A stretch of DNA of 64,000 bases from Octopus sinensis (GCF_006345805.1 NC_043012.1:18228001-18292000); one strand, 5' to 3'; positions 1 to 55,795 are shown, counted from the first letter of the stretch. The notes: generated by a model not told the origin, from the sequence alone. Numbers and translations: made by a program.

Positions 1-713
1 ACATCCGAGCATACGGTCACGTCTGTGTGTGTGATCGTTTGTAAATACAATCAGGCGTATATAGTGGCAGATAAATAAAGATAACTTAGATGAGAGAAGA
101 TTAACAGTAGTAGAGAGAGAGAGAGAGCGGTAGATGGCGGGCGGTGATTATTAATACTGTAAGACAATCAGTTGAAATAAGTGAAAGACAAAGCTCCATA
201 TTGTATTGATTAACTACTCTTGAAATATATATATTGCGTTGAAAGTTAGTGAAAGGCTTGCTAGATAAGGAGATATTTTAACTTAAATTATGTATCTCGG
301 TCGTTAAGCAGAGAACCTCGTCCATAAACTTATCCGAAGTATATTTATCATGTTAACATGAAATTCCCCAAGGTCAGCGTTGAAATATATCGCTAATATT
401 AACGAATGACTTATTCCCTGCAGGTTTTCATCCTTTTACGCCTGATATTTCCTTCATTATGAGAATTTCAGATTACTAATAGGGTTATTTTATTTCATTT
501 TTTTATTATTTTTATTTTGCTGTATACTGTGTATTAAATTCATAACGGATACTCAGTAGGACAAAAATTGTTCAATTACTGCATTAAACAAAAACAAATG
601 ATGCTGCCCAATGTCACGAAGAGTATCTATGGCCAAACTGCATGTATTTCAAATACTATACTTAAAGAAGAAACGAAGCATACACGTAAGCACGTGTGTG
701 TGCGTATGTATGT

Positions 714-1300: not shown

Positions 1301-1559
1301 CGCTAAATATCATATTTCGAGCTTCTAAGCATCCTGCAGCTTCTCGTCTGTAATAGCCGCTGTTTTTTTTTCTTGGACAAGGCCAACAATTATCAGCGGA
1401 CGACAGTAGTCGATGTTATCGGTGCCTAACTCTTGCGTGGGTCTCAATTCTATTGACCTCAGATGGATTGATTGTAAAGCTTACGTCGCGGGATTCGAAG
1501 TCGGAGCGTAAAGATTCCCAGTCATTGGGACACAGTAGAAATATATATTTTGTATATAT

Positions 1560-3118
1560 CAACATCACAATCAAGGAACGGCCATAATAGGCCATTCACC
1601 CACTAGAAATAACAGCCAAAGCTTCAACCGCAAAATAACATTAATTCCGCAAACCAGGAGAAAATTAAAAAAACGTTTACCCTGTAATTTCTTATACGAT
1701 ACACCGTTTCATCTACTGTTTAATGGTAAACTAACCTGATTAAATTAAATCAAGCCAATCTTCCATAGGCCCTTAGATTCGTCAGTAAGAAATAGCCAGA
1801 TCGGAACAGATATTTTCACGAGGCACTTCTGTCCCTGCCTCGGTAATAAACAGTAAACCATTAAACAGTAGATGAAACGGTGCATCGTATAAGAAATTAC
1901 AGGGTAAACGTTTTTTTTAATTTTCTCCTGGTTTGCGGAATTAATGTTATTTTGCGGTTGAAGCTTTGTCTGTTATTTCTAGTGGGTGAATGACCTATTA
2001 TGGCCGTTCCTTGATTGTGATGTTGAACTTATAAATGGTCTATGACTATTTAATTTTTTCCCACTAGGCCGCTGGTGACAAAAAAATTCTACAAAATTTT
2101 TTTGCCACCCGATATTGATTGATTAATTATGAATTTTCTGGTTGATTCCGTAATGGAATCGGCGGCTTATATTTATTTGCTGCCGATAAATTTGGCGCGA
2201 GTGCGATGATTTGAAAATTTTAGGTCAGATATTGCCGAGGCAGGGACAGAAGTGCCTCGTGAAAATATCTGTTCCGATCTGGCTATTTCTTACTGACGAA
2301 TCTAAGGGCCTATGGAAGATTGGCTTGATTTAATTTAATCAGGTTAGTTTACCATTAAACAGTAGATGAAACGGTGCATCGTATAAGAAATTACAGGGTA
2401 AACGTTTTTTTAAATTTTCTCCTGGTTTGCGGAATTAATGTTATTTTGCGGTTGAAGCTTTGTCTGTTATTTCTAGTGGGTGAATGGCCTATTATGGCCG
2501 TTCCTTGATTGTGATGTTGAACTTATAAATGGTCTATGACTATTTAATTTTTTCCCACTAGGCCGCTGGTGACAAAAAAATTCTACAAAATTTTTTTGGC
2601 ACCCTATATTGATTGATTAATTATGAATTTTCTGGTTGATTCCGTAATGGAATCGGCGGCTTATATTTATTTGCTGCCGATAAATTTGGCGCGAGTGCGA
2701 TGATTTGAAAATTTTAGGTCAGATATTGCCGAGGCAGGGACAGAAGTGCCTCGTGAAAATATCTGTTCCGATCTGGCTATTTCTTACTGACGAATCTAAG
2801 GGCCTATGGAAGATTGGCTTCATTTAATTTAATCAGGTTAGTTTACCATTAAACAGTAGATGAAACGGTGCATCGTATAAGAAATTACAGGGTAAACGTT
2901 TTTTTAAATTTTCTCCTGGTTTGCGGAATTAATGTTATTTTGCGGTTGAAGCTTTGGCTGTTATTTCTAGTGGGTGAATGGCCTATTATGGCCGTTCCTT
3001 GATTGTGATGTTGAACTTATAAATGGTCTATGACTATTTAATTTTTTCCCACTAGGCCGCTGGTGACAAAAAAATTCTACAAAATTTTTTTGCCACCCTA
3101 TATTGATTGATTAATTAT
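1560..3118 (+). mobile_element. TSD-flanked concatemeric insertion: inverted partial unit plus 2.55 tandem copies of a 494-bp unit
   Basis: ACCATTAAACAGTAGATG recurs at 1857, 2351 and 2845 (period 494). 1559-1848 is the reverse complement of about 2230-2520. TATTTTGTATATAT lies at 1546-1559 and 3116-3129, exactly at both boundaries. Confidence 0.85.
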
Positions 3119-3225
3119 TTTGTATATATATAAACTAATTCAGTAGATGCTTACAAGAAGAGAAAAGAGATAATAGAATAGAAAAATGGATCAAAATTTA
3201 ATATATGTTCTTACTGATTTTTACT

Positions 3226-3298
3226 CTTTTGAGAGAGAGAGAGAGAGAGATAAAGAGAGAGAGAGAGAGAAAGAGCGGGAGAGAAAGAGAGAGAGAAG

Positions 3299-3345
<47 letters not shown>
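3226..3345. repeat. (GA)n microsatellite
   Basis: Directly visible. Confidence 0.95.
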
Positions 3346-6344: not shown

Positions 6345-6730
6345 GGCGGCGAGCTGGCAGAAACGTTAGCACGCCGGACGAAATGCGTAGCCGGATTTCG
6401 TCTGCCGTTACGTTCTGAGTTCAAATTCCACCGAGGTCGACTTTGCCTTTCATCCTTTCGGGGTTGATTAAATAAGTTCCAGTTACGCACTGGGGTCGAT
6501 ATAATCGACTTAATGCGTTTGTCCGTCCTTGTTTGTCTTCTCTGTGTTTAGCCCCTTGTGGGTAGTAAAGAAATGGGTCTTTCGCCTGCCGCTACGTTCT
6601 GAGTTCAAATTCCGCCGACGTCGACTTTGCCTTTCTTCCTTTCGGGGTCGATAAGTTAAGTACCAGGTGCGCACTGGGGTCGATCTAATTCCCCCAAATT
6701 TTGTGACTTGTGCCTAGAGTAGTAAAGAGT
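6345..6730 (+). mobile_element. tRNA-derived SINE family A (octopus OK-like): full copy 6345-6578 plus 5'-truncated tandem copy 6581-6730
   Basis: Head GGCGGCGAGCTGGCAGAAACGTTAGC with B-box-like GAGTTCAAATTCC. Near-identical copies at 18399 and 20775. The family name is from recall. Confidence 0.85.
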
Positions 6731-18398: not shown

Positions 18399-18634
18399 AG
18401 CGAGCGGCGAGCTGGCAGAAACGTTAAAGACGCCGGGCGAAATGCTTAGCAGTATTTCGTCTGCCGCTACGTTCTGAGTTCAAATTCCACCGAGGTCGAC
18501 TTTTCCTTTCATCCTTTCGGGGTCGATTAAATAAGTACCAGTTACGCAATGGGGTCGATCTAATCGACTTGATCCGTTTGTCTCTCCTTGTTTGTCCCCT
18601 CTGTGTTTAGCCCCTTGTGGGTAGTAAAAAAATA
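18399..18634 (+). mobile_element. SINE family A, full length, with 15-bp TSD
   Basis: GGTATTTGTTGCTAT at 18384-18398 and 18635-18649 flanks the copy. Confidence 0.9.
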
Positions 18635-20774
18635 GGTATTTGTTGCTATGCATCGATGAGAAAAATATAATCTGAACTTACCAGGTTTTCAAATGTGGCT
18701 TTCGGTTAATCAAGAGAAAAGCATGCCAATGACCCTTTCCAGTGCTTCAGGGTCTGGAGGCGGGGATGGATGGCGATCAAATGTAAAGACGGTGTCTTCA
18801 ACCTTAAGGTCTGGTCCGTAATCCTGAAATAAAATGAACTTAGATACATATAGCTAATATCACCGAGTTGAAATGCGCGACGGAGTGAGTCATTCACTCC
18901 TGCTGAATGAACTTTCGATAAAATATGTTGCAAAACTACTACAAGACATACCACCTAATACTCTGAAGATACCACCAATCCGATGCCCTCAGAAAAACGA
19001 AAAGCTAGGTCGTGCTCGGAATTTTAGAAGCTGAAAACTATAGTGGAATATGTTTCGTTTGGCGTGTTAACGAATCTGTTATTCCACGATATTCTACATT
19101 GCTGGGAACAAATTTGTCCTTCATACATATCTAATCAGTAAAACGAAAGGTAAGTGTTTTGATCGAATTTCTGTCCAACAGTTGTTGCAACAATCAAGCC
19201 TGCTACTTTTATGATACAAGCTCTATCCATACCAATTACAAAACTAGCAATGCTATACTCCTTTATTTCATTTTGTTTTAGTTTTCTTTTCCTTGTAGTT
19301 TTGAGATGTTACAATGCAGCCCATCTGGGTTAACGGACGTTGAAGTATACTTTATTGAAAAGTGAATACATTGAAGAAAATTCTTCTCATGCCTACTTAG
19401 ACTGGGCACGATGACCGAAGAGCCACATATCCCAGTATTCAAGGCTGAATTGACACTTTGCTCCTTCTTTATGCGTTTCGAAGCTTACAATAAATGGAGT
19501 CAACATTCTACAAAGTAGTTGTGTGATCTTTGAGCTTTACAATATTATTCATCATGAAATTTTGAAAAGATTCTCTTCGAAAAAGCAATTGCCTCGTTGT
19601 TTGTAGAAGAACAAAAGCAACCGGTATCAATCGATGAAATAAACAGCATTAATTATTTGATTAAACCATGATTTTCTTTTTATTCTTATGCATATTAGGT
19701 ATAAATAACTATATAAATATTCACATTTCAATCCTCCTGCTCATAACAACACCACACCCGCCCCACCTCCACCACCATCACTAATACCACCACCACCAAC
19801 AACACCACCACCACCACCAACACCACCACAACTACCACTACTACTAGTATATGAGTACCCTTCCTATCGATAATTTTTAAAATACAGAAATCTTAAAGAT
19901 TTAAAAAGCAAATAGCACACTGTCTCACACACACATATACACACATACACACACACATATAAAAAACAAACAGGAATGTTTTCTCAACATTTATTCAAAA
20001 TGATTGAATTGCTAAGTGCAAGAATTTTGTAAAATTATATAATTTAATACAAATATATCTCCATTTTTAGAAATATAATATTTTTACTTGAATTATTTCT
20101 GTTCATGAATTGTAATGTATTCAGCAATGTTGAATAAAATCGTAGTAATGTTAGACTAAAAATATAGAAGTCTGTTCCTTACGAACTATACAAATATTTG
20201 TGAATATAGTTTCATTTTCACCTTTATAGGATATTCCCAGAAGAAAGCGAAATCAATTGAAAAATAGATTAACAGGAAATACATTTATATCTTTGTTTTC
20301 GTCTGAGATGTAGTTGGTTATACAATTACAATGAGACCACGCTGTCACGTGTGTTCACAAACACATTAGCTATCTTTTCTGTTTCGCCTCTCACTTCCAA
20401 TCTGTTTCTCAAGCTATCACTCGCACGCACATAAGCGACCGGTTCATCACCACTATACGCTCAAATACACATAAGCTAAAGCACATTTAAACAGACAACG
20501 CACACATAAACATGCGTACACGTACCTCCATGTGATAATCACGCATACAGACAATAATGTTTGTCTGTGTGTACACACTACCAGCAATCATTGGCCGGAT
20601 GTAACGTAAATACAGTCTTACGAATTTAATATATTTTGGACAAATAACCTAAAAACGGTACATAAGATATTTTGAGTTGGTCCTGTGATGCCGATTCAGT
20701 CATAACTGTTTCATCTCTGCAAATCTGAAGAAGGTTCAATTTAAGCTTCCTGAAGATGTACGAAATAAAAATAA

Positions 20775-21186
20775 GCGGCAGAAATGTTAGCACGCAGCAC
20801 GAAATGCTTAGTGGTGTTTCGTCTGCCGCTACGTTCTGAGTTCAAATTCCGCCGGAGCTCGACTTTGCCTTTCATCCTTTCGGGGTCAATTAAATAAGTA
20901 CCAGTTACGCACTGGGATCGATATAACCGACATAATCAGTCTGTCTGTCCTTGTTTGCCCTCTCTGTATTTAGCCCCTTGTGGGTAGTAAAGAAATATGC
21001 ATTTCGTCTGTCTTTAAGTTCTGAGTTCAAATTCCGCCGACGTCGACTTTGCATTTCATCTTTTCGAGGTCAATTAAATAAGTACCAGTTACACAGTGGG
21101 GTCGATGTGATCGACTTTATCACTTTGTCTGTCCTTGTTTTTCCCCTCTATATTTAGCCCCTTGTGGGCAATAAAGAAATAAGAAA
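20775..21186 (+). mobile_element. Two tandem SINE family A copies (20775-21000, 21001-21186)
   Basis: The family A body appears twice, each ending in CCCCTTGTGGG(T/C)A..AAAGAAAT. Confidence 0.85.
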
Positions 21187-21674
21187 TTGAAATAAAATCT
21201 TTACATTACATTTTCTTGTTTTCTCAAAATGTACAAGTTTGCCTCAGCAGTTTCTCCCTGATTCGTCCTGACAATCGGATGTTGGCATACACCGCTAATC
21301 TCAATGTACTTCTAATTATTTCTTGATGGCAACTTTCAATTCCATCTTGGGCTTTTAACCAATTCATTTAACTAAATCAGCTTCCCATCGTCGTGCAGGC
21401 TTTTCGAGTGGCCCGTTCTGATGTCTTGAATACCGCTCGGCAACGACAGGTATTCGCTTTCGACATGTCCGTCTCTGTGGAACTTGTGCTTCCGGTACTA
21501 CGCTTTCACGCCGTTCAATCTGCTCCGTTCTTTCATTACCTCATCTAGGCAATTACTCTAAATGCAATTTTTTTGATTTTCTTTCTAGCAGCAAACCTCT
21601 TGAAATCTCTCAATAGACTCACTCGAAACAGCAACAACAACACCAACAGCCACCACCACGACAGTGAAAATAAC

Positions 21675-21830
21675 AGTAATGGTTTCAAATTTTGGCACAA
21701 GGTCAGCGATTTCGAGGAAAGGAGTAAGTCGATTACATTCAGCCCAGCACACAACTGGTACTTATTTTATCCACCCCGAAAGGATAAAAGCAGAACTGAC
21801 GGCAAAGCGGTGGAATTTGAACGCAGAGCA
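21675..21830 (-). mobile_element. SINE family A fragment
   Basis: The reverse complement contains GTTCAAATTCCACCGC...TTCGGGGTGGATAAAATAAGTACCAGTT...CCTTGTGCCAAAATTTGAAACC. Confidence 0.7.
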
Positions 21831-22270
21831 TGAACAGGTGCTGGGCTAGCAAAATTGTTAGCACTCCAAGTAAAAGAGGCTGACTGCTACTCAGCTCATA
21901 TACCAGGAAATCCAGAATTGGAATAAATTTTAAAAACAAATGACCATGGGGACTGTCCATATCCTACGTTCAAATACTGTCTATATAATCCCCCCAATAT
22001 TTTAATCTGTAAATAGTGTGAAAATACTTTTAAATGTACATAACAGCAAATACCTTTTTTTGCTATCTTAACATCTGACAATCATCTTATAATCAAATTA
22101 CTTTTAAAACAAACTTTTAATTTACTTATGTTCTGACAGACATTCTCTAGAGCAATACTCTGTGCAAAACCAAATATATAACACCAACTTGAACTTCTAA
22201 ATTGTGGTCTCTTGGTGACTCTGGGTAAGACTTGGGGTCAAGTTCTACACATACAAGGCAAAAGCCAAAC

Positions 22271-22431: not shown

Positions 22432-23340
22432 TCTGAATTGTTGGTGTTTTCATTTGGTCTACCATGAGATATATTTGTCCTAATTTGACTAATTTCAACG
22501 TCAGTTTACCCATTGCAGCCTATATGTGGGTGTGTGTTTGTGTGTGCTTGCGTGTATTTGTGTGTTTTTTGTGCGTATATGTGTTTGTGTGTGAGTATGT
22601 GTGCAGGGAGATTTATTTATTGATATACATGCATATATTTACCCATATAACTGTGATGAGGTATATAATAGTGTTATTGTGTATATGTGGATAGTTGATC
22701 AAACCGTTGATAAATAAATATATGCGACACTGATTGGCTGTATATCCTTAGCTCGTATGTATCTACATGCAGCGGAAATAGAAATTTTGTGAATAGTAGA
22801 ACATCATAAAGCTGACCGTGACAATTAGAATATCCATCAGAGTTATGTAACGTGTAATTTGACTTGAAGAAATCAGCTTTCAATGACTCTATATTAACTG
22901 AAATGCGGATTACAAACTTACAAGAATATCGCCATCATTCCATAATATATAATGTCATGGAATTGTGTATGTTGTTTGGTGATATAGGTGAATATCCAGG
23001 AGATATAAATTATCAGATACCAAAGCTTTTTTCGATTGCATTTCAAATTACATTTGTTTTCGATAATATACGTAACATGCAATCGCCAAGGCAGATTCAG
23101 CCAAATAATAGTGATGCATATACGTAGAGTTAATAAGTTAGAAATATATAATCTTACAATCAAGAATCCATCGACTAACGGACTAAAATACACACCGAGA
23201 AACAAACACATACACACACACACGTCTATACGTACGTGCGCGCGGAAAGTATATACATACATATGTATATACATACATGTATATATATATATATATATGT
23301 ATATATTTACAAAAGAATGCATGTATATATATGTATTTCT

Positions 23341-23495
23341 TTATTGCCCACAGTGGGCAAACATAGCGGGGACAAACAAGGACAGACTAACGCATCAAGT
23401 CGACTGTATCGACCCCAGTGCGTAACTGGTACTTAATTCATCGACCCCGAAATGTTGAAAGACAAAGTCGACCTCGGCGGAATTTGAACTCGGCA
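23341..23495 (-). mobile_element. SINE family A fragment
   Basis: Reverse complement of the family A body (ATCGACCCCAGTGCGTAACTGGTAC...GTCGACCTCGGCGGAATTTGAACTC). Confidence 0.8.
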
Positions 23496-25421: not shown

Positions 25422-26971
25422 TAGTTTTATTTTTATAGCGTGCTTTCACTTCACTACCGAGCGCAGCTCTGTGTGCCTTGGGTATGTGCTGTGATTTGTT
25501 GTGATGCTCTGATGGTTATTGTATGGAAAGTGTTCTGCGTAGGATGTGTGCAGTGCCTAGTAGTGCAATTTTCTGTATGTTATATGTGTTTGTAAGTCCT
25601 GGTTTTTTTGTTATGTATTTGTCTGAATATTTTTTTATCATGCCTAATGCACCTACTATGATAGGAATTGTTTCTGTTTTCAGATTCCACATTCTAGTTA
25701 CCTCTATTTCCAGGTCTTTGTATTTTGAGAGTTTCTCCATTTCTTTAGAGACACGTTGTCATCTGCCGGTATTGATACATCAATTAGAAAGCATTTTTTT
25801 CTTCATGATCTCTGACAACTATATCTGGTCTGTTGGCCTTAATTTCTCTATCTGTGTGTATCGGCATATCCCAGAGTATGGTTGCTTTCTCGTTTTCTGT
25901 GACCTTTTCTGGTGTGTGCTTATACCATCTTTTTTCTGTTGTTATTCCATAATGTTGGCATAGCTTCCAATGTATGTAGGTCCCAACTCTGTCATGTCTG
26001 TGAATATATTCCTTCTTAGCCAGGACTGGGCAGCTAGAGATAATATGATTTATTGTTTCTTGTCCATCACCACATATTCTGCAGTTACTTGTAATATTTC
26101 TTTTCATTACATGTTTTTGGTAATTTCTGGTGGGGAGGCTTTGGTCTTGTGCTGCAATTAAAAATCCCTCTGTTTCTGCTTTGAGTCCTGAGCTTCTCAA
26201 CCATTGCTGGGATTTTTCTTTGTCTATTTCTTTTGCGTTTAGTTTAGTCCAGTATTTACCATGAAGGGGCTTTTCTTGCCATCGTTTTATCATGGTTCGT
26301 TGCTGTTCTATTTTTAGTTTGGATTTCATTTGTTTTATAGCTTTTGTTGTTTCTTCATCTTTTTCTTCTTTTTCTTCATGTTTATTAGGTGGTATGATTT
26401 CTTGTTTGTATTTGTCAGCTTCCTTAAATACTGAGAACAGTTTTTTGTTTTGCTCGTGTTTTGCCGCTATCTGGATCAGTTTTCCTTCCTTCTGAAGTAG
26501 ATATTTTTGCAGTGATATGGTGGTTATTTTATAGCAGTTTTCCAGCTGTATAAGGCCTCTACCACCTTCTATACGTTGTATATATAGTCTTTCTATGTCA
26601 GATTTTGGGTGATGCATCCTAGATCCTGTCATTATTTTTCTTGTTTTCCTATCTATTTTGGTCAGTTCATTTCGTGTCCAGTTAAGGATATTGTAGCTGT
26701 AACTTATAACTGGGACAGCTAAAGTGTTGATACCTATTATCTTGTTTTTAGCATTGAGCTCTGTTTTTAGTATTGATCTAACTCGTCTATAATATTCTTT
26801 TTTTATTTTCTCTTTCATTTGTGTGTGTTGTTTCGTATCTAGTTCATGGATTCCTAAGTATTTGTAAGTTTGGCTTTGGTCTAATTCTTTTATTTCATTG
26901 GTTTTATCTAGTGTGATGTTGTTACTCTTAACTAGTTTCCCTCTTTTCATGGTTACTTTGGCGCATTTTTC

Positions 26972-26972
<1 letters not shown>
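25419..26972 (-). mobile_element. 5'-truncated R4/Dong-clade non-LTR retrotransposon (RT thumb, CCHC knuckle, RLE domain) in (TAA)n arrays
   Basis: ORF 26950-25784 has YKYLG, GGRGL, CRICGDGQETINHIISSC, RHDRV and NRPDIVV. After two single-base homopolymer slips it continues as LIDVSIPADD..EKLSKYKDLEIEV..PIIVGALG..ILRRTL (25740-25516). TAA/TTA arrays lie on both sides. Confidence 0.92.
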
Positions 26973-27065
<93 letters not shown>

Positions 27066-27073
27066 CATTATCA

Positions 27074-27114
<41 letters not shown>

Positions 27115-27144
27115 GTTATTATTATTATTATTGTTGTTGTTGTT

Positions 27145-27263
27145 GAGAGAACAGTGCATGTCATCAAAGTGACACGGGGGTAAAATACACGTAGCGCAAC
27201 GTAGCCATCGTGACTACCCGTCTGACAAGGGTAGATGAGGCACGTGCATCACAACTATATGTG

Positions 27264-27264
<1 letters not shown>
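27145..27264 (-). mobile_element. 5'-truncated copy of the 24868-25374 non-coding element, inside TAA arrays
   Basis: CAAAGTGACACGGGGGTAAAATACACGTAGC...TGACTACCCGTCTGACAAGGGTA aligns to 24895-24990. It is flanked by (TTA/TTG)n and (TTA)n. Confidence 0.7.
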
Positions 27265-27306
<42 letters not shown>

Positions 27307-27312
27307 TTATTA

Positions 27313-27464
<152 letters not shown>

Positions 27465-27480
27465 GATTATTATTATCATT

Positions 27481-32124: not shown

Positions 32125-33442
32125 CGGGGTGTCCCAATAAGATGTATTCACTCTTTGACACACGATTGCTAATGTATTGTATTTTCTTATTTCAAACACA
32201 ACGAACCCTTCACAATTGCAAATGCACAACCAAGCTTTGAGGGAAAAATATATTAAATTGCTACTGGAAGCACTAAAATGTCACTGAAGTGCAAACGCAA
32301 CTTAACAGACAGTTTCACAAGACACCACTAATACGACGCACTATTGCTTGCATCAGAGATACATTTGAAGCGTACGGAACTGTTAAGAAAGTTCTGGAAG
32401 GCTACGAACATCCACCAGTCCCAATAGACACCCCCAATTAATGGAAACGCTTTCCCGATCCCCAAAGAAATCCGTAAGACAATTGAGTCGTGAGATAGGA
32501 ATCCCCAAATCGAGAGTTCATCGGATATTGAAACGAGCTCATTGGAAAAGTTACGTTCCAACTTCAATTTAAGCTCTCAATGAAGATGATCCTGATTTCA
32601 ATTTTGCAAATGGTATCTGAACTAATTCGCAGAGGATGCAACGTTTCCTGAGAGAAACCTTATGAAGCGATGGGACCACTTTCAAGTTAAATGGTTCAGT
32701 CAACCAACAAAATTGTACACACTGGACCCGTGAAAATCCACATTTTACTAAGGAGCACCATCTGAACTTACTAGGCGTAACAGTATGGTATGGGATGTCA
32801 ACATTGGGTATCGTTGGGCCAATTTCTTTTTTTACCAAACTGTCAGTGGCCCAGTTTACTGAAACTTACTGGTGGAAAATGTCGGTCCACGAATTGAAGA
32901 GATGTTTGGGGGCGAGGAGATTTACTTCCAGCAAGATGGAGCTCCTCCTCACTACCATCGGGATGTACGGGCTTACCTCGATGCAACAAATCCAAACAAA
33001 TAGATTGAGAGAAGAGGTAGCCTTGAATTTCCTGCACGTTCCCTAGACCTCACGGCAATGGGGTTTTTTTTATGAGGACATCTCAAAGATAAAGTTTACG
33101 CTGTAAAACCTGTGACAATTGATGATTTGAAAAATGAAATTCGAATACAATGCCTTGCAATTCCAAATGCAATGTTTGACAATGTTGTCGAATCCATTGT
33201 TGGACGTTAGCTTTGTTTGGAAAATAAAGAAAAGCAGTTTGAACATTTGCGAACTCGCAGGAAGGAGAGAGAACATTAAATAATTCTAAATGACAATAAA
33301 TAATCGTTTCTACACGAATATATTTTCCTGAATTTAATTTAGATATTTAGGATTGTATGTATATCAATAACCATCTGCTTGAACACAAAATACATTAGTG
33401 CTGGGAAGTCAAAGATTGAGTACATGTTTTGGGGGAACCCTG
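32125..33442 (+). mobile_element. Full-length decayed Tc1/mariner element, DD41D (rosa-like)
   Basis: TIRs 32125-32159 and 33408-33442 with TA on both sides. Transposase motifs WSDGTTFKLNGSVNQQN, FQQDGAPPHY and FPARSLDLTAM[G]FFL*GHLKDKVY. There are 41 residues between the second D and the third catalytic position (now G). It carries stops and frameshifts. Confidence 0.92.
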
Positions 33443-35877: not shown

Positions 35878-36127
35878 GTCATTCAGTTTGTTTTAAGATT
35901 CCTTGCCAATAGAGAAAGAACCGGTTTCTAACCTAGATCCAAGACTCCTTCATTGGAATTTCAACATCAACAAGAGGGTATTTTGTATGTATGTATGTAT
36001 GTATGTATGTATGTATGTATGTCATTCAGTTTGTTTTAAGATTCCTTGCCAATAGAGAAAGAACCGGTTTCTAACCTAGATCCAAGACTCCTTCATTGGA
36101 ATTTCAACATCAACAAGAGGGTATTTT
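35878..36127 (-). mobile_element. Two 107-bp 3' ends of the RLE LINE at 37048, each embedded in (TATG)n (35878-35984, 36021-36127)
   Basis: Both match 37048-37160 (TTCAGTT..CAAGATT..AATAGAGAAAGA..TTCTAACCTAGATCCAAG..CCTTCATTGGAATTT). Confidence 0.9.
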
Positions 36128-36148
36128 GTATGTGTGTATGTATGTATG

Positions 36149-36165
<17 letters not shown>

Positions 36166-36179
<14 letters not shown>

Positions 36180-36534
36180 CTATGTATCTATTTATCTATG
36201 TATCTATGTACGTACGTATGCATGCATTTATGTATATATGTAAGTATGTATGTATGTATTCTCATGCAAATAGCTGAATATATAGACTTTATCATATATA
36301 TTTAAATGATAAACTGGAAAGTTTTACAGTTCCAGCGATAGATTGGATCTATAGTCTTCGAATTAGATTTCTTCTCTCTGGTTTTGAGAAGCCTAATTCC
36401 GCAAGATTGGTATTTACGCAGCGTGTTACATAACCCAGGGCCCGAAGAATTACAGCTATATAGCTGATGCATGCATTTATGTATGTATGCACGTATGCAT
36501 GAGTGTGTGCGTATGTATATATGTATATATGTAC

Positions 36535-36565
<31 letters not shown>

Positions 36566-36984
36566 TGTATGTATGTATGTATGTATGTATGTATTATGTA
36601 TGTATGTATGTAGTATGTATGTATGTATGTATCTATGTATCTATTTATCTATGTATCTATGTACGTACGTATGCATGCATTTATGTATATATGTAAGTAT
36701 GTATGTATGTATTCTCATGCAAATAGCTGAATATATAGACATTATCATATATATTTAAATGATAAACTGGAAAGTTTTACAGTTCCAGCGATAGATTGGA
36801 TCTATAGTCTTCGAATTAGATTTCTTCTCTCTGGTTTTGAGAAGCCTAATTCCGCAAGATTGGTATTTACGCAGCGTGTTACATAACCCAGGGCCCGAAG
36901 AATTACAGCTATATAGCTGATGCATGCATTTATGTATGTATGCACGTATGCATGAGTGTGTGCGTATGTATATATGTATATATG

Positions 36985-37018
<34 letters not shown>

Positions 37019-37047
37019 TGTATGTATGTATGTATGTATGTATGTAT
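36166..37047 (-). mobile_element. 453-bp tandem duplication, each unit carrying an RLE-LINE C-terminal/3' fragment (36259-36468, 36712-36921) in (TATG)n
   Basis: The period is 453 bp (TTCTCATGC at 36259 and 36712). Minus translation AVILRALGYVTRCVNTNLAELGFSKPERRNLIRRL*IQSIAGTVK. Homologous to 37350-37405. Confidence 0.8.
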
Positions 37048-38315
37048 GTCAATATTCAGTTTTATTTCAAGATTGCTTGCAAATAGAGAAAGAGCCAGTT
37101 TCTAACCTAGATCCAAGGCTCCTTCATTGGAATTTGAACAACATTAACAGGACATTTCCTGTGTATGTATACGTGAAGATTTGTGTGCTTTGTTTTGTGT
37201 TTGTATGCTGAACGCTGCGTAGAGTTGCGTATCTAGTCATGTTCATGTCAATTTCATTGATAAACTTCTGTAATTTTTTTTTTTGATAGACTTCATCCGC
37301 AGTCTTCGAATCAACTTTCCCCTTTCTGTTTTGCAAATGCCCAATTTCTGAAGATTGGTATTTAGGCAGTGTTTTACATATCTCAGTGCCCCAATAATTA
37401 CAATACTTGAATATGTATTCTGGATAGAGTAACTGCAAATTTATCAATAGTTCGGCGTAGGTATTTTCTTTTTCGCTGATCTTCAGGTGGGCAGCTGATT
37501 TCCACAACTGTACACAATTTCTCTTTTCTACCACAAATCATTATGTCAACTCTATTGTGTTTACTATTATTTATTATTGAGGTTTTCACTTGCACATTCC
37601 ACCAGTACGCCTTTTTATTAAGATGCTATGGCTTCCACCATACTGTGAGTTCTTTTTTCTTTGTCCTCGGGGTTATCCTTCTGACGGAATTTCGTTACAA
37701 AATATCCTAGCTACATTATGTCTCATCGGTAGATAATACTGTGAAGACATTTTCGGACAACTGCTTACGATGTGGGTCTGCAATTGCTAGCCAATCTGGT
37801 ATGCTATTATTCCCATTGAGAGCTTACTGGTACAGGTTGATAACATATGGACGGTAGAAGGCTAGCTTCTTGTACCAGTATCCAACAATCAAATCTCTTG
37901 CAAGTACTTTTACATCTTGAAGTTTCTAGATTGAGAGTCATAAGTGTATCAGCATCAATGCTATTTGCCTTGTGTGTGACGCAAAGACAATAACTTCTTC
38001 GAATTTCTTCCAGCCACAGACACCTTGTTTAAACTCCATTTACTCGCTCTAAATTTTCCTCCAGAAATATTCTATGTCTTCTCGTGAAGACATAGAATAT
38101 TGCTTCTCCTCTCATGGCACTGTGCACTGCAACCTGTTTCCGCAAAATTTTTTGTGTTTATTGTTTTCTTCTCGCTTATTGTTTCTGATGACACAGTTTC
38201 TCATTGACAGCTTTTAGACCCTGTTTCAGAATCGTCAGTTTGCAATTGAGCGTCCAGTTTATACTATCTCCAAACACCACTTCACTATCCTTCTTCACTT
38301 TTTGGTATTGAGACG
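37048..38315 (-). mobile_element. RLE-type (R4/Dong-like) LINE with the RT core deleted; 3' end abuts (CATA)n
   Basis: Minus translation DLIVGYWYKKL..PDWLA (pre-RT) joins directly to HIVSSCP..RHNVA, then YWWNVQVKT..KHNRVDIM..VVEISCP..KISEKENTYAELL..IVIIGAL. The 3' end is AATAAAACTGAATATTGA(CATA)n. Confidence 0.85.
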
Positions 38316-44736: not shown

Positions 44737-44782
<46 letters not shown>

Positions 44783-44814
44783 TTTATTTTAAGCAGCAGA
44801 AAATTCAACAAAAT

Positions 44815-44852
44815 CTGTTACTCTGAGTTTCTCGTTGCCGTTCATCAGACAG
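44815..44852 (-). ncRNA. Minimal type-I hammerhead ribozyme (mirror copy)
   Basis: Exact reverse complement of 44872-44909. Confidence 0.85.
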
Positions 44853-44871
44853 TAGTTTTTGCTAGCAAAAA

Positions 44872-44909
44872 CTGTCTGATGAACGGCAACGAGAAACTCA
44901 GAGTAACAG
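44872..44909 (+). ncRNA. Minimal type-I hammerhead ribozyme
   Basis: CTGT-CTGATGA-aCGgcaaCGa-GAAA-CTCaGAG-TA-ACAG. Canonical core, 4-bp stem I, palindromic stem III and a GUA cleavage triplet. Confidence 0.85.
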
Positions 44910-45021
44910 ATTTTGTTGAATTTTCTGCTGCTTAAAATAAAGCTTATTACTCTTACCACTGGTATTTGAGTACTCTTTTTTCCACCTTGTTTCACATTTA
45001 TGTCTTTACTCCAGTATATAT

Positions 45022-45078
<57 letters not shown>

Positions 45079-45127
45079 AATATGAAAAAGAATGGAGTCG
45101 AACGAAGATTTTAACAAAATTCCTTTA

Positions 45128-45210
45128 CTCCCGACACATGTTTCGAAGACGGCTTTCTTTTAATTCCGAAGGAATAAATGGTGCATTATGCCATCTTCTC
45201 ATCAGGAAAG
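45128..45210 (-). ncRNA. Type-I hammerhead ribozyme with extended stem II
   Basis: Minus strand CTTTC-CTGATGA-GAAGATGGC..loop..GCCGTCTTC-GAAAC-ATGT-GTC-GGGAG. 9-bp stem II, palindromic ACATGT and a GUC triplet. Confidence 0.8.
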
Positions 45211-46317
45211 ATAAGGAACCTCTTTCAGCCACAAGACGAACACAAATTTTGTTTTCTGACGTGAATTTACTACCCAGGTATCGGTTAACCTAATTTTCCA
45301 TGCTAGGATAATCCATTCACTTACTTAAATATATATATATATGTATATATATATGTATATATGTATATATATATATATTTGTATATATCTGTGTGTGTGT
45401 GCCTGTGTGTTTGTCACCCCTCCATTGCTTGACAACCTATGCTGGTGTGGTTATGTTCCTGTAAACCTAGCCGTATGGCAAATAACGACGAGAAAATAAA
45501 TACGAGACTTTCAAAAATGTGTATAGGAGTCGATTTATTCGACCGAATATACTTCAAGGTGGTGTTCGAGCATGGCCGCAATCTGGTGACTGAAACAAGT
45601 AAAGGAGATACACACATACATACATAGATACATACACACACAAAAATAGTATCTATAGATTTTTCTAAGCCCCACGTTCCGTTCCAGGAATATAAACACA
45701 CACGTTAAGTGAGATACACGTAAGAACACACATACACATAAGAACACACGCACGAGCACACAAGCACACATACCCGCGCAATCGCGCTCGCACGAACCCA
45801 TGCATATATATTCCCAAATTTCGTCTGCTACAGATACATTTCTGTGTTATTTAGCACTATACCCCTAGACGAGGTCCTTTATCAAGAGAAATACTCTCGT
45901 TTTATGGCGTTCTGCTGTATATCCATGGAAGTAAATTTGGTAAACGGATACTGAATGAAGTCCGTCCTATATATGTCTGTATATATGTATATGTGTTTCT
46001 GTATCTGTGTGTGTGCGTGTGCGCGAGCGTGAGGGTGTATCTTTTTGCTTGTATTTGTCCCCCACCATTGCTTGACTACCGATGGTGGTGGGCTTACGTC
46101 CTCGTAACTTAGCGGTTCGGCAAAATATAGAGTAAGTACCAGGCGCAAAAGGAAAAGTACTGGGATTGATACTTTCCACTAAATGTTCAATGAGGTGCTC
46201 CGGTATGGCCGCACTGAAATGACTGAGACAACTACAAGAATATATATATATATGTGTGTATATATTTATATGTATGTATATTATGTATGTTTGGATATAT
46301 ATATTCTATATATTATA

Positions 46318-46360
<43 letters not shown>

Positions 46361-46428
46361 CATACATATATACATATATATATATAAACACATATATATA
46401 CATATATATACATATATATATATATATA

Positions 46429-46496
<68 letters not shown>

Positions 46497-46553
46497 ATAT
46501 ATAGGAATAAATGAAAGAATGGAGTCGAACGAAGATTTTACAAAATTCCTTTA

Positions 46554-46632
46554 CTCCCGACACATGTTTCGAAGACGGCTTTGTTTTAATCCGAAGAATA
46601 AATGGTGCATTGCCCTCTTCTCATCAGGAAAG
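46554..46632 (-). ncRNA. Duplicate of the 45128-45210 hammerhead
   Basis: Same core. Stem II has one G.G mismatch. Confidence 0.75.
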
Positions 46633-47727
46633 ATAGGAGCCTCTTTCACGCCACAAGACGAACACAAATTTTGTTTTCTGACGTGAATTACTACCAGGTA
46701 TCGGTTAACCTAATTTTCCATGCTAGGATAATCCATTCACTTACTTAAATATATATATATATGTATATATATATGTATATATGTAATATATATATATATT
46801 TGTATATATCTGTGTGTGTGTGCCTGTGTGTTTGTCACCCCTCCATTGCTTGACAACCTATGCTGGTGTGGTTATGTTCCTGTAAACCTAGCCGTATGGC
46901 AAATAACGACGAGAAAATAAATACGAGACTTTCAAAAATGTGTATAGGAGTCGATTTATTCGACCGAATATACTTCAAGGTGGTGTTCGAGCATGGCCGC
47001 AATCTGGTGACTGAAACAAGTAAAGGAGATACACACATACATAGATAACACACACACCAAAAAAGTCTCTAGATTTTTCTAAGCCCCACGTTCCGTTCCA
47101 GGAATATAAACACACACGTTAAGTGAGATACACGTAAGAACACACATACACATAAAACACACGCACGAGCACACAAGCACACATACCCCGCGCAATCGCG
47201 CTCCGCACGAACCCATGCATATATATTCCCAAATTTCGTCTGCTACAGATACATTTCTGTGTTATTTAGCACTATACCCCCCTAGACGAGGTCCTTTATC
47301 AAGAGAAATACTCTCGTTTTATGGCGTTCTGCTGTATATCCATGGAAGTAAATTTGGTAACGGATACTGAATGAATCCGTCCTATATATGCCTGTATATA
47401 TGTATATGTGGTTCTGTATCTGTGTGTGTGGCGTGTGCGCGAGCGTGAAGGGTGTATCTTTTTGCTTGTATTTGTCCCCCCCATTGCTTGACTACCGATG
47501 GTGGTGGGCTTACGTCCTCGTAACTTAGCGGTTCGGCAAAATAGATTAAGTACCAGGCGCAAAAGGAAAGTACTGGGATTGATACTTTCCACTAAATGTT
47601 CAATGAGGTGCTCCGGTATGGCCGCACTGAAATGACTGAGACAACTACAAGAATTATATATATATGTGTGTATATATTTATATTGTATGTATTTATATGT
47701 ATGTTGGATATATATATTATAATATAT

Positions 47728-47773
<46 letters not shown>

Positions 47774-47837
47774 CATACATATATACACATATATATATAT
47801 ACACATATATATACATATATATACATATATATTATAC

Positions 47838-47907
<70 letters not shown>

Positions 47908-47939
47908 CTATATATGTTCTATATAATATATATATATAC

Positions 47940-49030: not shown

Positions 49031-49574
49031 ATTCTGTATTTTATTAAACTATACACACGCTCCTATATATATGTGTATGTGTATGATTACTTGTATGCTA
49101 ATATTATTTAACCTTATTGGCTGTTTGGTTTTATTTGTTCAACTTGCCATTTGTACTGTGGCTAAAATAATCATTTACTGGTCTCCACACGAGGAGGTGA
49201 ACAACAAAAGAGTAATCGGACATGACTTTTAGTTAAACGGGTTTTGTGCTTGCTACAATCGTCTAACACATTTTGATTAGCTGTGAAACAAGTGAGATCT
49301 TGATTTATTATTCCATTCCTAACACAGTTGGAATTTGCTGCATATTTGGACAATTTTATTGCTAAACCATGGGTTGTATAGTGACGGTCATCTTACTGAA
49401 GCTTACACTTATTCCCACATGGGAAGAATTCTATAACATACAACATTTATTAAACTTTCTTTATTTTTTGTCACCTATACTAGCTGTGTGTATGCTCAAA
49501 GATTACCAACTTTCAGTACTAGCTTCATTCGGATCGAACTACCATTTAATTTAATTATATATATATATTTATAT

Positions 49575-50561
49575 CATGGCTCTTACAGACATGCTATCAG
49601 TTAAAAAGACAGCAGCATTTAGTAGCTATGCTGACGACACAAAAATAGTGCAAACTCTCAAAGACAATACGAATCTACTACAGAATGACCTAAATGCCAT
49701 CTCTAAATGGGCTGAAGACAACAATATGCAAATTAATGCACGCAAATTACAAGCAGCTAATTGGTCCTCAGAAATCCCAACAACAATAGTTTGGACCAAA
49801 ATGAGCGGTACTCCTAGCATCACATATGGTAGTGATCTTGGGATTGATATGATTAACAACGCCTCGTTTCACATGCATATCACCAATATGGTGGCAGTGT
49901 GCAAGGGAATGGTCGGATGGATTCTTAGAACATTTAGAACGAGGGATCAGGAAACTATTCTGATCCTATGCCGTCTGGAGTACTGCTCTCAACCGTGGTT
50001 ACACTGTAGGATTAATAGAAGAGCTACACGATAATAGCGATACTACACGAGGAAGATTGCATCAAAGAAACAATTGAACTACTCGGAGAGGCTGAAATAC
50101 CTAGGACTGTAATCTCTGGAGCAAAGACGGGAGAAGTATGCAGTGGCATACGTGTGGAAGATACTGGAGGGGCTGGCACAAAACTTTGGAGTTAAGAGTT
50201 ATACCAGACCTCGGAGTGGACGTCACTGTACTGTTGCAAAATCGGAGCTGCCTCATCTAAGGCGAGGACCATATACTGCAATAGCTTGCGATTCAAGAGC
50301 CCACATATATTTAACTCATTGCCAAAATATCTGAGAGATCTCCATGGAGTAGGAGTAGATGTTATCAAGAAACAACTTGACCTCTTGCTATCCAAGATCC
50401 CAGATGAACCGATATCAGGGCAGGAAAGTGAAAGCGGGCAGCGGTATCGAATTCCCTCCTTCACCAAAGTCTCATAGAATTAGCCAATTAAAAGGTGATT
50501 ACATTGGCGATGCCCCAGCATGGCTGCATCCTCAGGGATGAAATATATAAAAGAATAAAGG
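49575..50561 (+). mobile_element. 5'-truncated, decayed CR1/L2-type LINE (RT C-terminal half plus 3' UTR)
   Basis: YADDTK, LQNDLNAISKWAEDNNMQIN, DLGI, GWILRTFRTRD, RLEYCSQPW, YVWKILEGL and IFNSLPKYLR..LDLLLSKIPDEP, interrupted by stops and frameshifts. Confidence 0.9.
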
Positions 50562-55349: not shown

Positions 55350-55506
55350 CACACAAATATATATATATATACATGTATATATATGTATATGTGCATATAT
55401 ACATATATACATATATATATGTATATATATATATATACATACATATATATAAATATATACATAAATATATATATATATAATATATATATATACATACATA
55501 CATACA

Positions 55507-55542
<36 letters not shown>

Positions 55543-55598
55543 TATATATTATATATATATATAATATATATAATATATATATATATATGTATATGTAT

Positions 55599-55650
<52 letters not shown>

Positions 55651-55748
55651 ATATATATATAATATATATATATATAATATATATATATATTATATATATA
55701 TATACATACATACATACTACATACATACATATATATAATATATATATA

Positions 55749-55788
<40 letters not shown>

Positions 55789-55795
55789 ATATATG
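55350..55795. repeat. Long degenerate (TA)n/(TACA)n array
   Basis: Directly visible. Confidence 0.9.

What the first reader, a model, noticed from the sequence alone, without database searches (positions are those of the whole stretch)
1546..3129. Concatemeric 494-nt unit retro-inserted as one event (14-bp TSD, 5' inversion)
Seen: 2.55 head-to-tail copies of a 494-bp unit (1857-3118), preceded by an inverted partial copy (1559-1848). The 14-mer TATTTTGTATATAT sits exactly at both outer boundaries, and the 3' end falls in a short ATTGATTGATT tail. Known: a variable-length TSD with 5' inversion is the signature of target-primed reverse transcription with twin priming, and PLEs also produce tandem and inverted terminal copies. 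Inference: the template was a multimeric or circular RNA, as for retrozymes, yet there is no ORF, tRNA head or canonical hammerhead. It could be an undescribed non-autonomous, circle-templated retroelement.
Basis: partly seen in the sequence, partly recalled or inferred. Interest (0 to 1): 0.8.

Follow-up and report, generated by a model that had tools for sequence, protein, structure and literature searches.

The report
Tandem hammerhead retrozyme insertion with TSD

Summary
There are 2.55 head-to-tail copies of a 494-bp unit at 1857-3118 (99% identical) and an inverted partial copy at 1560-1848 (98%). The 14-mer TATTTTGTATATAT sits at both outer edges and nowhere else in the 64 kb.

Every unit encodes a complete type I hammerhead on the + strand:
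- helix I is 8 bp;
- the core is CUGACGA...GAA;
- helix II is 5 bp plus a 58-nt hairpin insert;
- helix III is ACGG-UGCA-UCGU;
- the cleavage site is GUA.

Rfam misses it because of the long helix II. Shuffled windows give 0.023 such motifs per 64 kb.

The element therefore fits the published metazoan non-LTR retrozymes: tandem, AT-rich, non-coding, highly self-paired units with a type I hammerhead and a TSD longer than 4 bp. Its shape (partial tandem, inverted 5'-truncated copy, extension at one end, TA-rich target) is the documented signature of Penelope-like element (PLE) integration.

I could not reach other genomic copies, a PLE partner or RNA data. Verdict: new member of a known kind, of moderate interest.

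The parts
1546..1559 (.). Left copy of the 14-bp target-site duplication TATTTTGTATATAT
   Evidence: It is exact, and the only two exact copies in the window sit at the two element edges.
1560..1848 (-). Inverted, 5'-truncated partial copy (0.59 unit). It is the reverse complement of unit phase 374..494+1..170. Its outer end is unit position 169/170.
   Evidence: (I1-I5). It is 98% identical to the direct copies.
1687..1793 (-). Complete type I hammerhead inside the inverted arm. The core starts at 1785 and cleavage would fall after 1695 on the minus strand.
   Evidence: descriptor scan: helix I 8 bp, helix II 5 bp, helix III 4 bp.
1849..1856 (.). Filler of about 8 nt at the inverted/direct junction. 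AAACAGTA repeats the unit sequence lying 6 nt downstream, at 1863-1870.
   Evidence: junction string CTCGGTAATAAACAGTAAACCATTAAACAGTAGATG. Reading it as a templated or microhomology join is inference.
1857..3118 (+). Direct array of 2.55 units of 494 bp: 1857-2350, 2351-2844 and 2845-3115/3118. It ends at unit position 271-274.
   Evidence: (D2).
2285..2391 (+). Type I hammerhead A. Helix I 5' strand 2285-2292 (AUUUCUUA). Core 2293-2299 (CUGACGA). Helix II 2300-2367 (AUCUA..58 nt..UAGAU). GAA 2368-2370. Helix III 2371-2382 (ACGG-UGCA-UCGU). A17 at 2383, with cleavage after it. Helix I 3' strand 2384-2391 (UAAGAAAU).
   Evidence: The three-way fold is -31.7 kcal/mol against an MFE of -33.8.
2779..2885 (+). 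Type I hammerhead B, the same motif one period downstream, with cleavage after A2877.
2384..2877 (+). Predicted self-cleaved 494-nt monomer, the only full unit flanked by two complete hammerheads at this locus. It is the candidate circRNA.
   Evidence: Derived. Fold z = -3.77. Circular MFE is -134.9 kcal/mol with 66% paired, against -103.0 for the opposite polarity. Expression and circularisation are not shown.
3062..3097 (+). Perfect 36-nt A/U-rich hairpin GGUGACA..UGCCACC, also at 2074-2109 and 2568-2603. It lies 18-21 nt upstream of the 3' terminus of the insertion.
   Evidence: structure picked up as a sub-threshold miRNA-like hairpin. Any role is inferred.
3103..3109 (+). UUGAUUG motif 6-9 nt upstream of the right terminus. 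The only other UUGAUUG of the unit (1568-1574 on the minus strand in the inverted arm) lies 8-9 nt from the left terminus.
   Evidence: The chance that two random unit positions share such a 7-mer at a similar offset is about 0.009.
3116..3129 (.). Right copy of the 14-bp target-site duplication

Best explanation
The element is one insertion of a metazoan non-LTR retrozyme, a non-coding, non-autonomous retroelement whose 494-nt unit carries a type I hammerhead ribozyme.

Proposed life cycle (steps 1, 2 and 4 are inferred; for step 3 only its footprint is seen):
1. A tandem source locus is transcribed on the + strand.
2. The hammerheads cut after GUA, releasing 494-nt monomers that host ligase can circularise.
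3. A reverse transcriptase/endonuclease from an autonomous element, most likely a Penelope-like element, cuts an AT-rich target with a stagger of about 14 bp. Both exposed 3'-OH ends prime cDNA synthesis at internal sites of an uncleaved multimer or a circle. Each site lies 6-9 nt 3' of a UUGAUUG. The bottom-strand cDNA ran 2.55 units and became the direct array. The top-strand cDNA ran 0.59 unit and became the inverted arm.
4. The two cDNAs were joined through a short templated filler, and gap repair created the TSD.

Shown by sequence: the repeat architecture, the TSD, the complete hammerhead motif in every unit, the absence of coding capacity and the strand-specific RNA foldability.
For: Architecture and TSD.

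Hammerhead:
- All core nucleotides are present: C3-A9 as CUGACGA, G12-A14, A15.1-U16.1 and H17 = A. The three helices are 8, 5 and 4 bp in all three complete copies.
- The same descriptor gives 0.023 hits per shuffled 64-kb window, and 0 in 300 shuffles at the observed helix lengths.
- MFE folding recovers helices I and II unaided. The full three-way fold costs only 2.1 kcal/mol more than the MFE.
- The helix III loop UGCA is palindromic, as is typical of metazoan type I hammerheads (PMC4209133).

Unit properties:
- No open frame exceeds 49 aa, and GC is 36.6%.
- The RNA is highly self-paired. Linear z = -3.77. The circular + polarity folds at -134.9 kcal/mol against -103.0 for the - polarity.
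- These match the published definition: tandem units of 150-450 bp, GC below 45-50%, no LTR/PBS/PPT, TSD longer than 4 bp, self-paired circRNA (PMC7229834).
- Hammerhead satellites of about 500 bp are known, such as pDo500 at 463-505 bp (PMC2837043).

PLE link:
- Partial tandems, an adjacent inverted 5'-truncated copy, an extension at one end only and (TA)n/AT-rich targets are listed PLE hallmarks (PMC8557442).
- A purified PLE protein cleaves and extends both DNA strands and starts reverse transcription at internal RNA sites (PMC11167929).
- The target here is ATATATATTTTGTATATATATA.
- Both termini are internal to the ribozyme-defined monomer, and the direct arm crosses two cleavage sites. 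The template was therefore uncleaved or re-ligated RNA.
Against: - Only this one locus could be examined. There is no second copy in the window. Nothing turned up in the protein database, in exact-ORF look-ups or in metagenome and viral contigs. Family copy number and mobility rest on the TSD alone.
- No PLE RT or GIY-YIG was found among window ORFs of 60 aa or more that passed a sequence-complexity filter. Only LINE RT fragments were found.
- Rfam hammerhead models do not hit the element.
- Position 10.1-11.1 is A-U rather than the usual G-C, and helix II carries a 58-nt insert. Catalytic activity is therefore unproven.
- The 'extension' between the two termini is about 104 nt, against the 30-40 bp PLE tail.
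- Units differ at about 1%. One variant is shared by copy 3 and the inverted arm. That cannot separate a circle from a linear multimer as template.
Confidence: 0.75

Rival explanations
1. The retrozyme RNA is the same, but a LINE (non-LTR retrotransposon) mobilised it through classical TPRT with twin priming, not a PLE.
For: A TSD of 11-14 bp with a 5' inversion is the classic L1 twin-priming footprint (established knowledge). LINE RT fragments lie in the window at 25787-27022(-) and 49555-50031(+), and no PLE was seen there. PMC7229834 leaves LINEs open as possible mobilisers.
Against: There is no poly(A) or appended microsatellite tail, because the 3' end is internal unit sequence. The inferred nick sites are not T-rich L1-type sites. 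Type I hammerhead, tandem copies and an inverted 5' copy together are PLE hallmarks. A 2026 preprint places vertebrate retrozymes as sisters of PLE pLTRs.
Confidence: 0.12
2. The array arose at the DNA level. Either a satellite or eccDNA fragment, amplified by rolling circle, was captured at a double-strand break, or replication-based rearrangement produced a local duplication and inversion. No RNA intermediate is involved.
For: Tandem repeats and fold-back inversions can arise from replication errors. No RNA data are available.
Against: An exact 14-bp duplication of unique target sequence sits precisely at both edges, which indicates a staggered cut and fill-in, not break capture. There is a functional-looking strand-specific ribozyme, and RNA folding is asymmetric between strands. 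Both termini lie next to the same 7-mer.
Confidence: 0.06
3. The copy number or the inverted arm is an assembly artefact of a repeat collapsed or mis-joined in the assembly.
For: PLE-type tandem/inverted structures are known to trouble assemblies (PMC8557442). Independent-assembly look-ups of ORFs spanning the junctions found nothing.
Against: The units carry private substitutions, which argues against a simple read pile-up artefact. The junction has a specific filler. The TSD closes the structure cleanly.
Confidence: 0.04
4. The hammerhead-like motif is a dead or fortuitous relic, and the repeat is an ordinary tandem repeat with no ribozyme-based life cycle.
For: There is no Rfam hit. Position 10.1-11.1 is A-U and helix II is unusually long. 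Activity is untested.
Against: The motif is expected 0.023 times per window by chance, yet it is present and intact in all three complete copies. Rfam also misses the second, fully canonical G10.1-C11.1 hammerhead pair in the same window, so the Rfam negative carries little weight. Paired changes at 10.1/11.1 occur in natural cricket hammerheads.
Confidence: 0.03

Closest known systems
Metazoan non-LTR retrozymes (Cervera and de la Pena 2020, PMC7229834)
   Same: Tandem head-to-tail non-coding units. A type I hammerhead in each unit. Low GC (36.6%). No LTR, PBS or PPT. TSD longer than 4 bp. Highly self-paired unit RNA. The proposed target-primed tandem cDNA synthesis from circular or oligomeric RNA.
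   Different: The 494-nt unit is at or above the upper end of the usual 150-450 nt range. Helix II carries a 58-nt hairpin insert, and 10.1-11.1 is A-U. Helix III can form 4 bp, so it may work as a monomer. CircRNA expression and a co-resident PLE are not shown here.
Penelope-like element (PLE) insertion architecture (Craig et al. 2021, PMC8557442; Frangieh et al. 2024, PMC11167929)
   Same: 5' truncation. A partial tandem. An inverted 5'-truncated copy abutting the 5' end. Extra sequence at one end only. An AT-rich or (TA)n-like target. Both DNA strands apparently used as primers. Internal initiation of reverse transcription.
   Different: There is no RT or GIY-YIG ORF, so the element is non-autonomous. 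The one-sided extension is about 104 nt rather than 30-40 bp. The initiation sites lie next to UUGAUUG rather than in an AC-rich stem-loop.
pDo500 hammerhead satellite of Dolichopoda cave crickets (PMC2837043)
   Same: A unit of about 500 bp (463-505 bp) with a type I hammerhead that processes multimeric transcripts. Natural variation at 10.1/11.1 is tolerated when pairing is kept.
   Different: pDo500 has a compact 49-nt hammerhead and forms long satellite arrays. Here the hammerhead is 107 nt and sits in a short dispersed-type insertion with a TSD. Sequence relatedness to pDo500 was not tested, because no pDo500 sequence was available.
LINE-1 twin priming (5' inversion)
   Same: The geometry TSD / inverted 5' segment / direct 3' segment / TSD, with a microhomology or filler junction.
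   Different: There is no poly(A). The template is a repeated or circular ribozyme RNA, and the target is not TTTT/AA-like.
Plant LTR retrozymes (PMC4918200)
   Same: Non-autonomous, hammerhead-processed circRNA intermediates.
   Different: The plant elements have type III hammerheads inside LTRs, PBS and PPT, 4-bp TSDs, high GC and Gypsy-dependent mobilisation. None of these features is present here.

Membership tests
Metazoan non-LTR retrozyme | Type I hammerhead with the conserved catalytic core in each tandem repeat | tested here: met
   The motif CUGACGA / GAA / A15.1-U16.1 / GUA, with helices of 8, 5 and 4 bp, occurs at 2285-2391, 2779-2885 and 1793-1687(-). Shuffles expect 0.023. Deviations are an A10.1-U11.1 pair and a 68-nt helix II. 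There is no Rfam hit.
Metazoan non-LTR retrozyme | Short head-to-tail tandem units (about 150-450 bp, from dimers to multimers) | tested here: met
   period 494, 2.6 copies, 99% identity. This is slightly above the typical size, but pDo500 at 463-505 bp is a precedent.
Metazoan non-LTR retrozyme | Low GC (below 45-50%), non-coding, no LTR/PBS/PPT | tested here: met
   GC 36.6% and a longest open frame of 49 aa. No tRNA-like head. No terminal direct repeats other than the units themselves.
Metazoan non-LTR retrozyme | TSD longer than 4 bp when present | tested here: met
   a 14-bp exact duplication, or 11-14 bp once junction microhomology is allowed for.
Metazoan non-LTR retrozyme | Highly self-paired unit RNA | tested here: met
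   z = -3.77; circular MFE -134.9 kcal/mol, 66% paired, and 32 kcal/mol more stable than the opposite polarity.
Metazoan non-LTR retrozyme | Self-cleavage and accumulation as circRNA | not testable with these tools
   No transcriptome data or bench assay is available. Only the motif and its foldability are shown.
Metazoan non-LTR retrozyme | Multiple dispersed genomic copies with co-resident PLEs | not testable with these tools
   No eukaryotic genome collection can be searched by DNA. All look-ups were empty. There is no PLE domain in the window.
PLE-type integration product | Partial tandem plus an adjacent inverted 5'-truncated copy | tested here: met
   set against the description in PMC8557442.
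PLE-type integration product | AT-rich or (TA)n target with a variable-length TSD | tested here: met
   the empty site reads ...GAAATATATATTTTGTATATATATAAAC... A single locus cannot show length variability.
PLE-type integration product | One-sided 'tail' defined by two internal RT start sites | tested here: inconclusive
   The termini sit at unit positions 169/170 and 271-274, each 6-9 nt 3' of UUGAUUG (p about 0.009). The interval is about 104 nt, not 30-40 bp. The two terminal regions show no wider similarity. More copies are needed.
PLE (autonomous) | RT plus GIY-YIG endonuclease ORF | tested here: not met
   no ORF in the unit. The element is not itself a PLE and is at most a non-autonomous dependant.
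LINE/SINE-type retroposon | Poly(A) or appended simple-repeat 3' tail; tRNA/7SL/5S head for SINEs | tested here: not met
   the terminal ATTGATTGATT is internal unit sequence; no tRNA, 7SL or 5S.
DNA transposon / Helitron | Terminal inverted repeats at both ends, or 5'-TC...CTRR-3' ends without a TSD | tested here: not met
   the ends are CAACATCAC... and ...GATTGATTAAT, which are not mutually inverted. A TSD of 14 bp is present.

The most novel reading that the evidence does not exclude
This locus may be a cleanly resolved snapshot of a retrozyme integrated by dual-strand target priming. Under that reading, both staggered DNA ends started reverse transcription at two distinct UUGAUUG-proximal sites of a circular or oligomeric ribozyme RNA. 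It would define a sequence-specific initiation signal and a roughly 100-nt 'tail' for a retrozyme/PLE pair. It would also do so in a hammerhead variant (A10.1-U11.1, 58-nt helix II insert) that current covariance models overlook, which implies that such retrozymes are under-counted in invertebrate genomes.
Probability: 0.3. Interest if true: 0.5.

Novelty: new member of a known kind. Interest (0 to 1): 0.35.

Why it matters
The finding turns a supposedly undescribed circle-templated retroelement into a recognisable animal retrozyme. It has three modest points of value:
- It shows that Rfam-based screens miss type I hammerheads with a long helix II. Two families in one 64-kb window went undetected.
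- The intact TSD, the inverted arm and the two termini next to the same 7-mer give single-locus, sequence-level support for PLE-style dual-strand priming with internal initiation on retrozyme RNA. That model currently rests on co-occurrence, phylogeny and one in-vitro system.
- The locus has exactly two complete hammerheads flanking one unit, so it is a ready-made construct for testing self-cleavage and circRNA formation.

Tried and rejected
- Rfam cmscan over the region at E<=10 and over the whole window at gathering threshold found no ribozyme. I rejected this as evidence of absence, because the same tool also missed the canonical hammerheads at 45.1 and 46.6 kb.
- The tRNA scan found none.
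- Coding capacity: no frame exceeds 49 aa.
- Search for relatives, all empty: exact-product look-ups of unit ORFs and of junction-spanning ORFs; a protein search with five concatenated unit peptides; two metagenome scans and one viral-contig scan with hammerhead-spanning patterns.
- Search for a PLE in the window: Pfam on about 130 open frames of 60 aa or more that passed a sequence-complexity filter, joined into pseudo-proteins, found only LINE zf-RVT and RVT_1.
- Organism identification failed. The best relative of the window's LINE is a Logan contig from SRR7158634 (94% aa, 92.8% nt). A second is a contig of GCA_024449705.1. Neither accession is named in the paper library.
- I tested whether the two terminal regions are paralogous modules. 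Global alignment scored no better than shuffles, so only the 7-mer is shared.
- Substitutions among units cannot separate a circle from a linear multimer as template. There is only one informative site.

Full report
**1. Observation**

The repeat structure is real and lies at the stated coordinates.
- Tandem Repeats Finder gives a 494-bp period, 2.6 copies and 99% matches at 1857-3118.
- BLAST of one unit against the window recovers 1857-2350 (98.99%), 2351-2844 and 2845-3118 (99.27%). It also recovers a reverse-complement partial copy at 1559-1848 that covers unit phase 374..494+1..170 (I1-I5).
- The 14-mer TATTTTGTATATAT is exact at 1546-1559 and 3116-3129. It occurs exactly nowhere else in the 64 kb.
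- No other copy of the unit is in the window.

Two details need correcting.
- The 'ATTGATTGATT tail' is ordinary internal unit sequence, present in all three copies.
- Each junction carries 1-3 nt of microhomology, so the duplication is 11-14 bp.

The window is eukaryotic: 34% GC, dense microsatellites and LINE fragments.

**2. The missed hammerhead**

Rfam found no ribozyme. A direct motif scan did, and a stricter descriptor scan of the whole window confirmed it. On the + strand every unit has:
- AUUUCUUA, the helix I 5' strand;
- CUGACGA, core positions C3-A9;
- AUCUA, a 58-nt hairpin, then UAGAU, together forming helix II;
- GAA, core positions G12-A14;
- ACGG-UGCA-UCGU, helix III, with A15.1-U16.1 and C15.2-G16.2;
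- A17, with cleavage after GUA;
- UAAGAAAU, the helix I 3' strand and a perfect 8-bp complement.

Complete copies lie at 2285-2391 and 2779-2885, and on the minus strand in the inverted arm at 1793-1687. Markov-shuffled windows yield 0.023 descriptor hits per 64 kb. None of 300 shuffles reached the observed helix lengths.

Unconstrained folding of 2270-2400 recovers helices I and II. Enforcing the full three-way junction costs only 2.1 kcal/mol (-31.7 against -33.8). The palindromic UGCA loop of helix III is the usual metazoan feature that also permits dimeric hammerheads (PMC4209133).

There are two deviations from the textbook motif: A10.1-U11.1 instead of G-C, and the very long helix II. 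Paired changes at 10.1/11.1 are documented in natural cricket hammerheads (PMC2837043). The long helix II explains the Rfam miss. The same window holds a second, fully canonical hammerhead pair with a 50-54-nt helix II, and Rfam misses that too.

**3. Properties of the unit**

- No open frame exceeds 49 aa in any of six frames of the concatenated unit, and GC is 36.6%.
- No tRNA-like or other known RNA gene is present.
- The ribozyme-defined monomer (2384-2877) folds with z = -3.77 against shuffles.
- As a circle, the + polarity reaches -134.9 kcal/mol with 66% of bases paired, against -103.0 for the complement. This asymmetry points to selection at the RNA level on the hammerhead-bearing strand.
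- At this locus exactly one full unit is flanked by two complete hammerheads, so a read-through transcript could release one 494-nt RNA.

**4. Anatomy of the insertion**

From left to right the element reads: TSD, inverted arm (0.59 unit), filler of about 8 nt, direct arm (2.55 units), TSD.
- The direct arm runs uninterrupted across the cleavage sites at 2383 and 2877. It also crosses the cleavage-equivalent position 1889 in the truncated first copy.
- The inverted arm likewise contains an uncut hammerhead.
- Neither terminus coincides with a cleavage site.

The template was therefore an uncleaved oligomer or a re-ligated circle, and cDNA synthesis began at internal positions.

The outer end of the inverted arm is unit position 169/170. 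The outer end of the direct arm is 271-274. Each lies 6-9 nt 3' of UUGAUUG, and these are the only two UUGAUUG in the unit. For random pairs of unit positions such a coincidence occurs about 0.9% of the time. Beyond the 7-mer, the two terminal regions are not similar.

The filler AAACAGTA(A) at 1849-1856 repeats the sequence 6 nt further on. I read this as a templated or microhomology join of two cDNA ends, which is inference.

The reconstructed empty site is TA-rich...GAAATATATATTTTGTATATATATAAAC....

Units differ at about 1%, mostly by private changes. One variant is shared by copy 3 and the inverted arm. That is too little to tell a circle from a heterogeneous multimer.

**5. Comparison with what is known**

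Cervera and de la Pena (PMC7229834) defined metazoan non-LTR retrozymes as follows:
- type I hammerheads within short tandem repeats (150-450 bp, dimers to multimers);
- GC below 45-50%;
- no LTR, PBS or PPT;
- TSDs longer than 4 bp when present;
- highly self-paired circRNAs.

They also proposed that a DNA-target-primed circRNA is copied into tandem cDNAs, with PLEs as the likely mobilisers. A 2026 preprint finds vertebrate retrozymes to be sisters of PLE pLTRs.

Craig et al. (PMC8557442) list the standard PLE insertion features: 5' truncation, partial tandems, an inverted 5'-truncated copy abutting the 5' end, an extension at one end only, and a preference for (TA)n targets.

Frangieh et al. 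(PMC11167929) show that a purified PLE protein cleaves and extends both DNA strands. It starts reverse transcription at two internal RNA sites whose interval equals the 'tail', and it prefers AT-rich DNA.

Every sequence-level criterion that can be tested here is met. Expression, circularity, copy number and a resident PLE could not be tested.

**6. Mechanism and confidence**

The most likely reading is a retrozyme insertion made by PLE-type dual-strand target-primed reverse transcription of oligomeric or circular hammerhead RNA. Confidence is about 0.75 for 'retrozyme insertion' and somewhat lower, about 0.6, for 'PLE-mobilised'.

Rivals:
- LINE twin priming of the same RNA, 0.12. There is no poly(A) or appended tail, and the nick sites are not L1-like. 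LINEs are, however, present in the window and a PLE is not.
- A DNA-level origin, 0.06. It is contradicted by the exact TSD and by the strand-specific RNA features.
- An assembly artefact, 0.04. It is untestable here, but the units carry private substitutions.
- A fortuitous or dead motif, 0.03.

**7. Limits**

I could not reach any other copy of the unit. Exact-product look-ups, a protein search with unit peptides, and metagenome and viral pattern scans were all empty.

No PLE domain was found among the window ORFs that I scanned. Only LINE zf-RVT and RVT_1 fragments turned up.

The organism remains unidentified. The window's LINE is 92.8% identical at the nucleotide level to a Logan contig from SRR7158634.

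**8. Verdict**

The mechanistic intuition is largely right, but the claim of novelty rests on a missed hammerhead. This is a new family-level member of a described class, so interest is moderate. The residual value lies in the well-resolved integration footprint and in the demonstration that long-helix-II hammerheads escape standard screens.

Noticed in passing
window 45122-45216 (-) and 46548-46637 (-), within 45015-47915: There is a second, unrelated and fully canonical type I hammerhead family. It has core CUGAUGA, a G10.1-C11.1 pair, a 9-bp helix II stem with a 50-54-nt helix II in total, helix III GAAAC-AUGU-GUC, and helix I CUUUC/GGGAG plus CCUU/AAGG. It occurs twice, 1422 bp apart, inside a two-copy tandem duplication of about 1.42 kb (95.3% identity) that is bounded and separated by (TA)n tracts. 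It could be a 1.4-kb dimeric retrozyme in a (TA)n target, or a hammerhead fragment carried along by a segmental duplication.
   Followed up: partly
window 2285-2391 and 45122-45216: Rfam 15 cmscan reports neither hammerhead family, even at E<=10. The long helix II inserts appear to defeat the Hammerhead_1 model, so Rfam-negative tandem repeats may still be retrozymes.
   Followed up: yes
window 44777-44947: A near-perfect hairpin has 77-nt arms, 97% complementarity and a 17-nt loop. It scores 40-43 bits on several miRNA models on both strands, below their thresholds. It looks like a MITE-like or foldback element.
   Followed up: no
window 25787-27022 (-) and 49555-50031 (+): These are LINE remnants. 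One is a 388-aa open frame with a zf-RVT domain whose relatives lie in cnidarians, shrimps and fish at about 50% identity. It is 94% aa and 92.8% nt identical to a 990-nt Logan contig from SRR7158634. The other is a 152-aa RVT_1 fragment with YADD.
   Followed up: partly
window 6424-6591, 18483-18677, 20744-20935, 21604-21846, 23179-23433: A dispersed short repeat, SINE-like, is seen as recurring pseudo-peptides (...CVTGTYLIDPERMKGKV...) on both strands. A 184-bp x2 tandem at 20817-21181 overlaps one copy.
   Followed up: no
window 32666-33043 (+): An open frame of 126 aa (…NGSVNQQNCTHWTRENPHF…GVTVWYGMS…) resembles, from memory, a mariner/Tc1-type transposase remnant. Pfam gave no hit at E<=0.001.
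   Followed up: partly
window 3140-3148: The right flank contains CAGTAGATG, identical to the unit's helix II/core segment (for example 2360-2368). The left flank has ACAGTAGA at about 1531-1538. A shared 9-mer between the unit and an 80-nt flank is expected about 0.3 times by chance, so this is probably coincidence.
   Followed up: partly
whole window, for example 924-1298, 3231-3344, 27022-27480, 36127-37049, 46240-46503, 55357-55794: Microsatellite density is exceptional: (TCTA)n, (GA)n, (TA)n, (ATGT)n and (TTA)n. There are also several 140-450-bp two-copy tandems. CpG observed/expected is 0.90.
   Followed up: no
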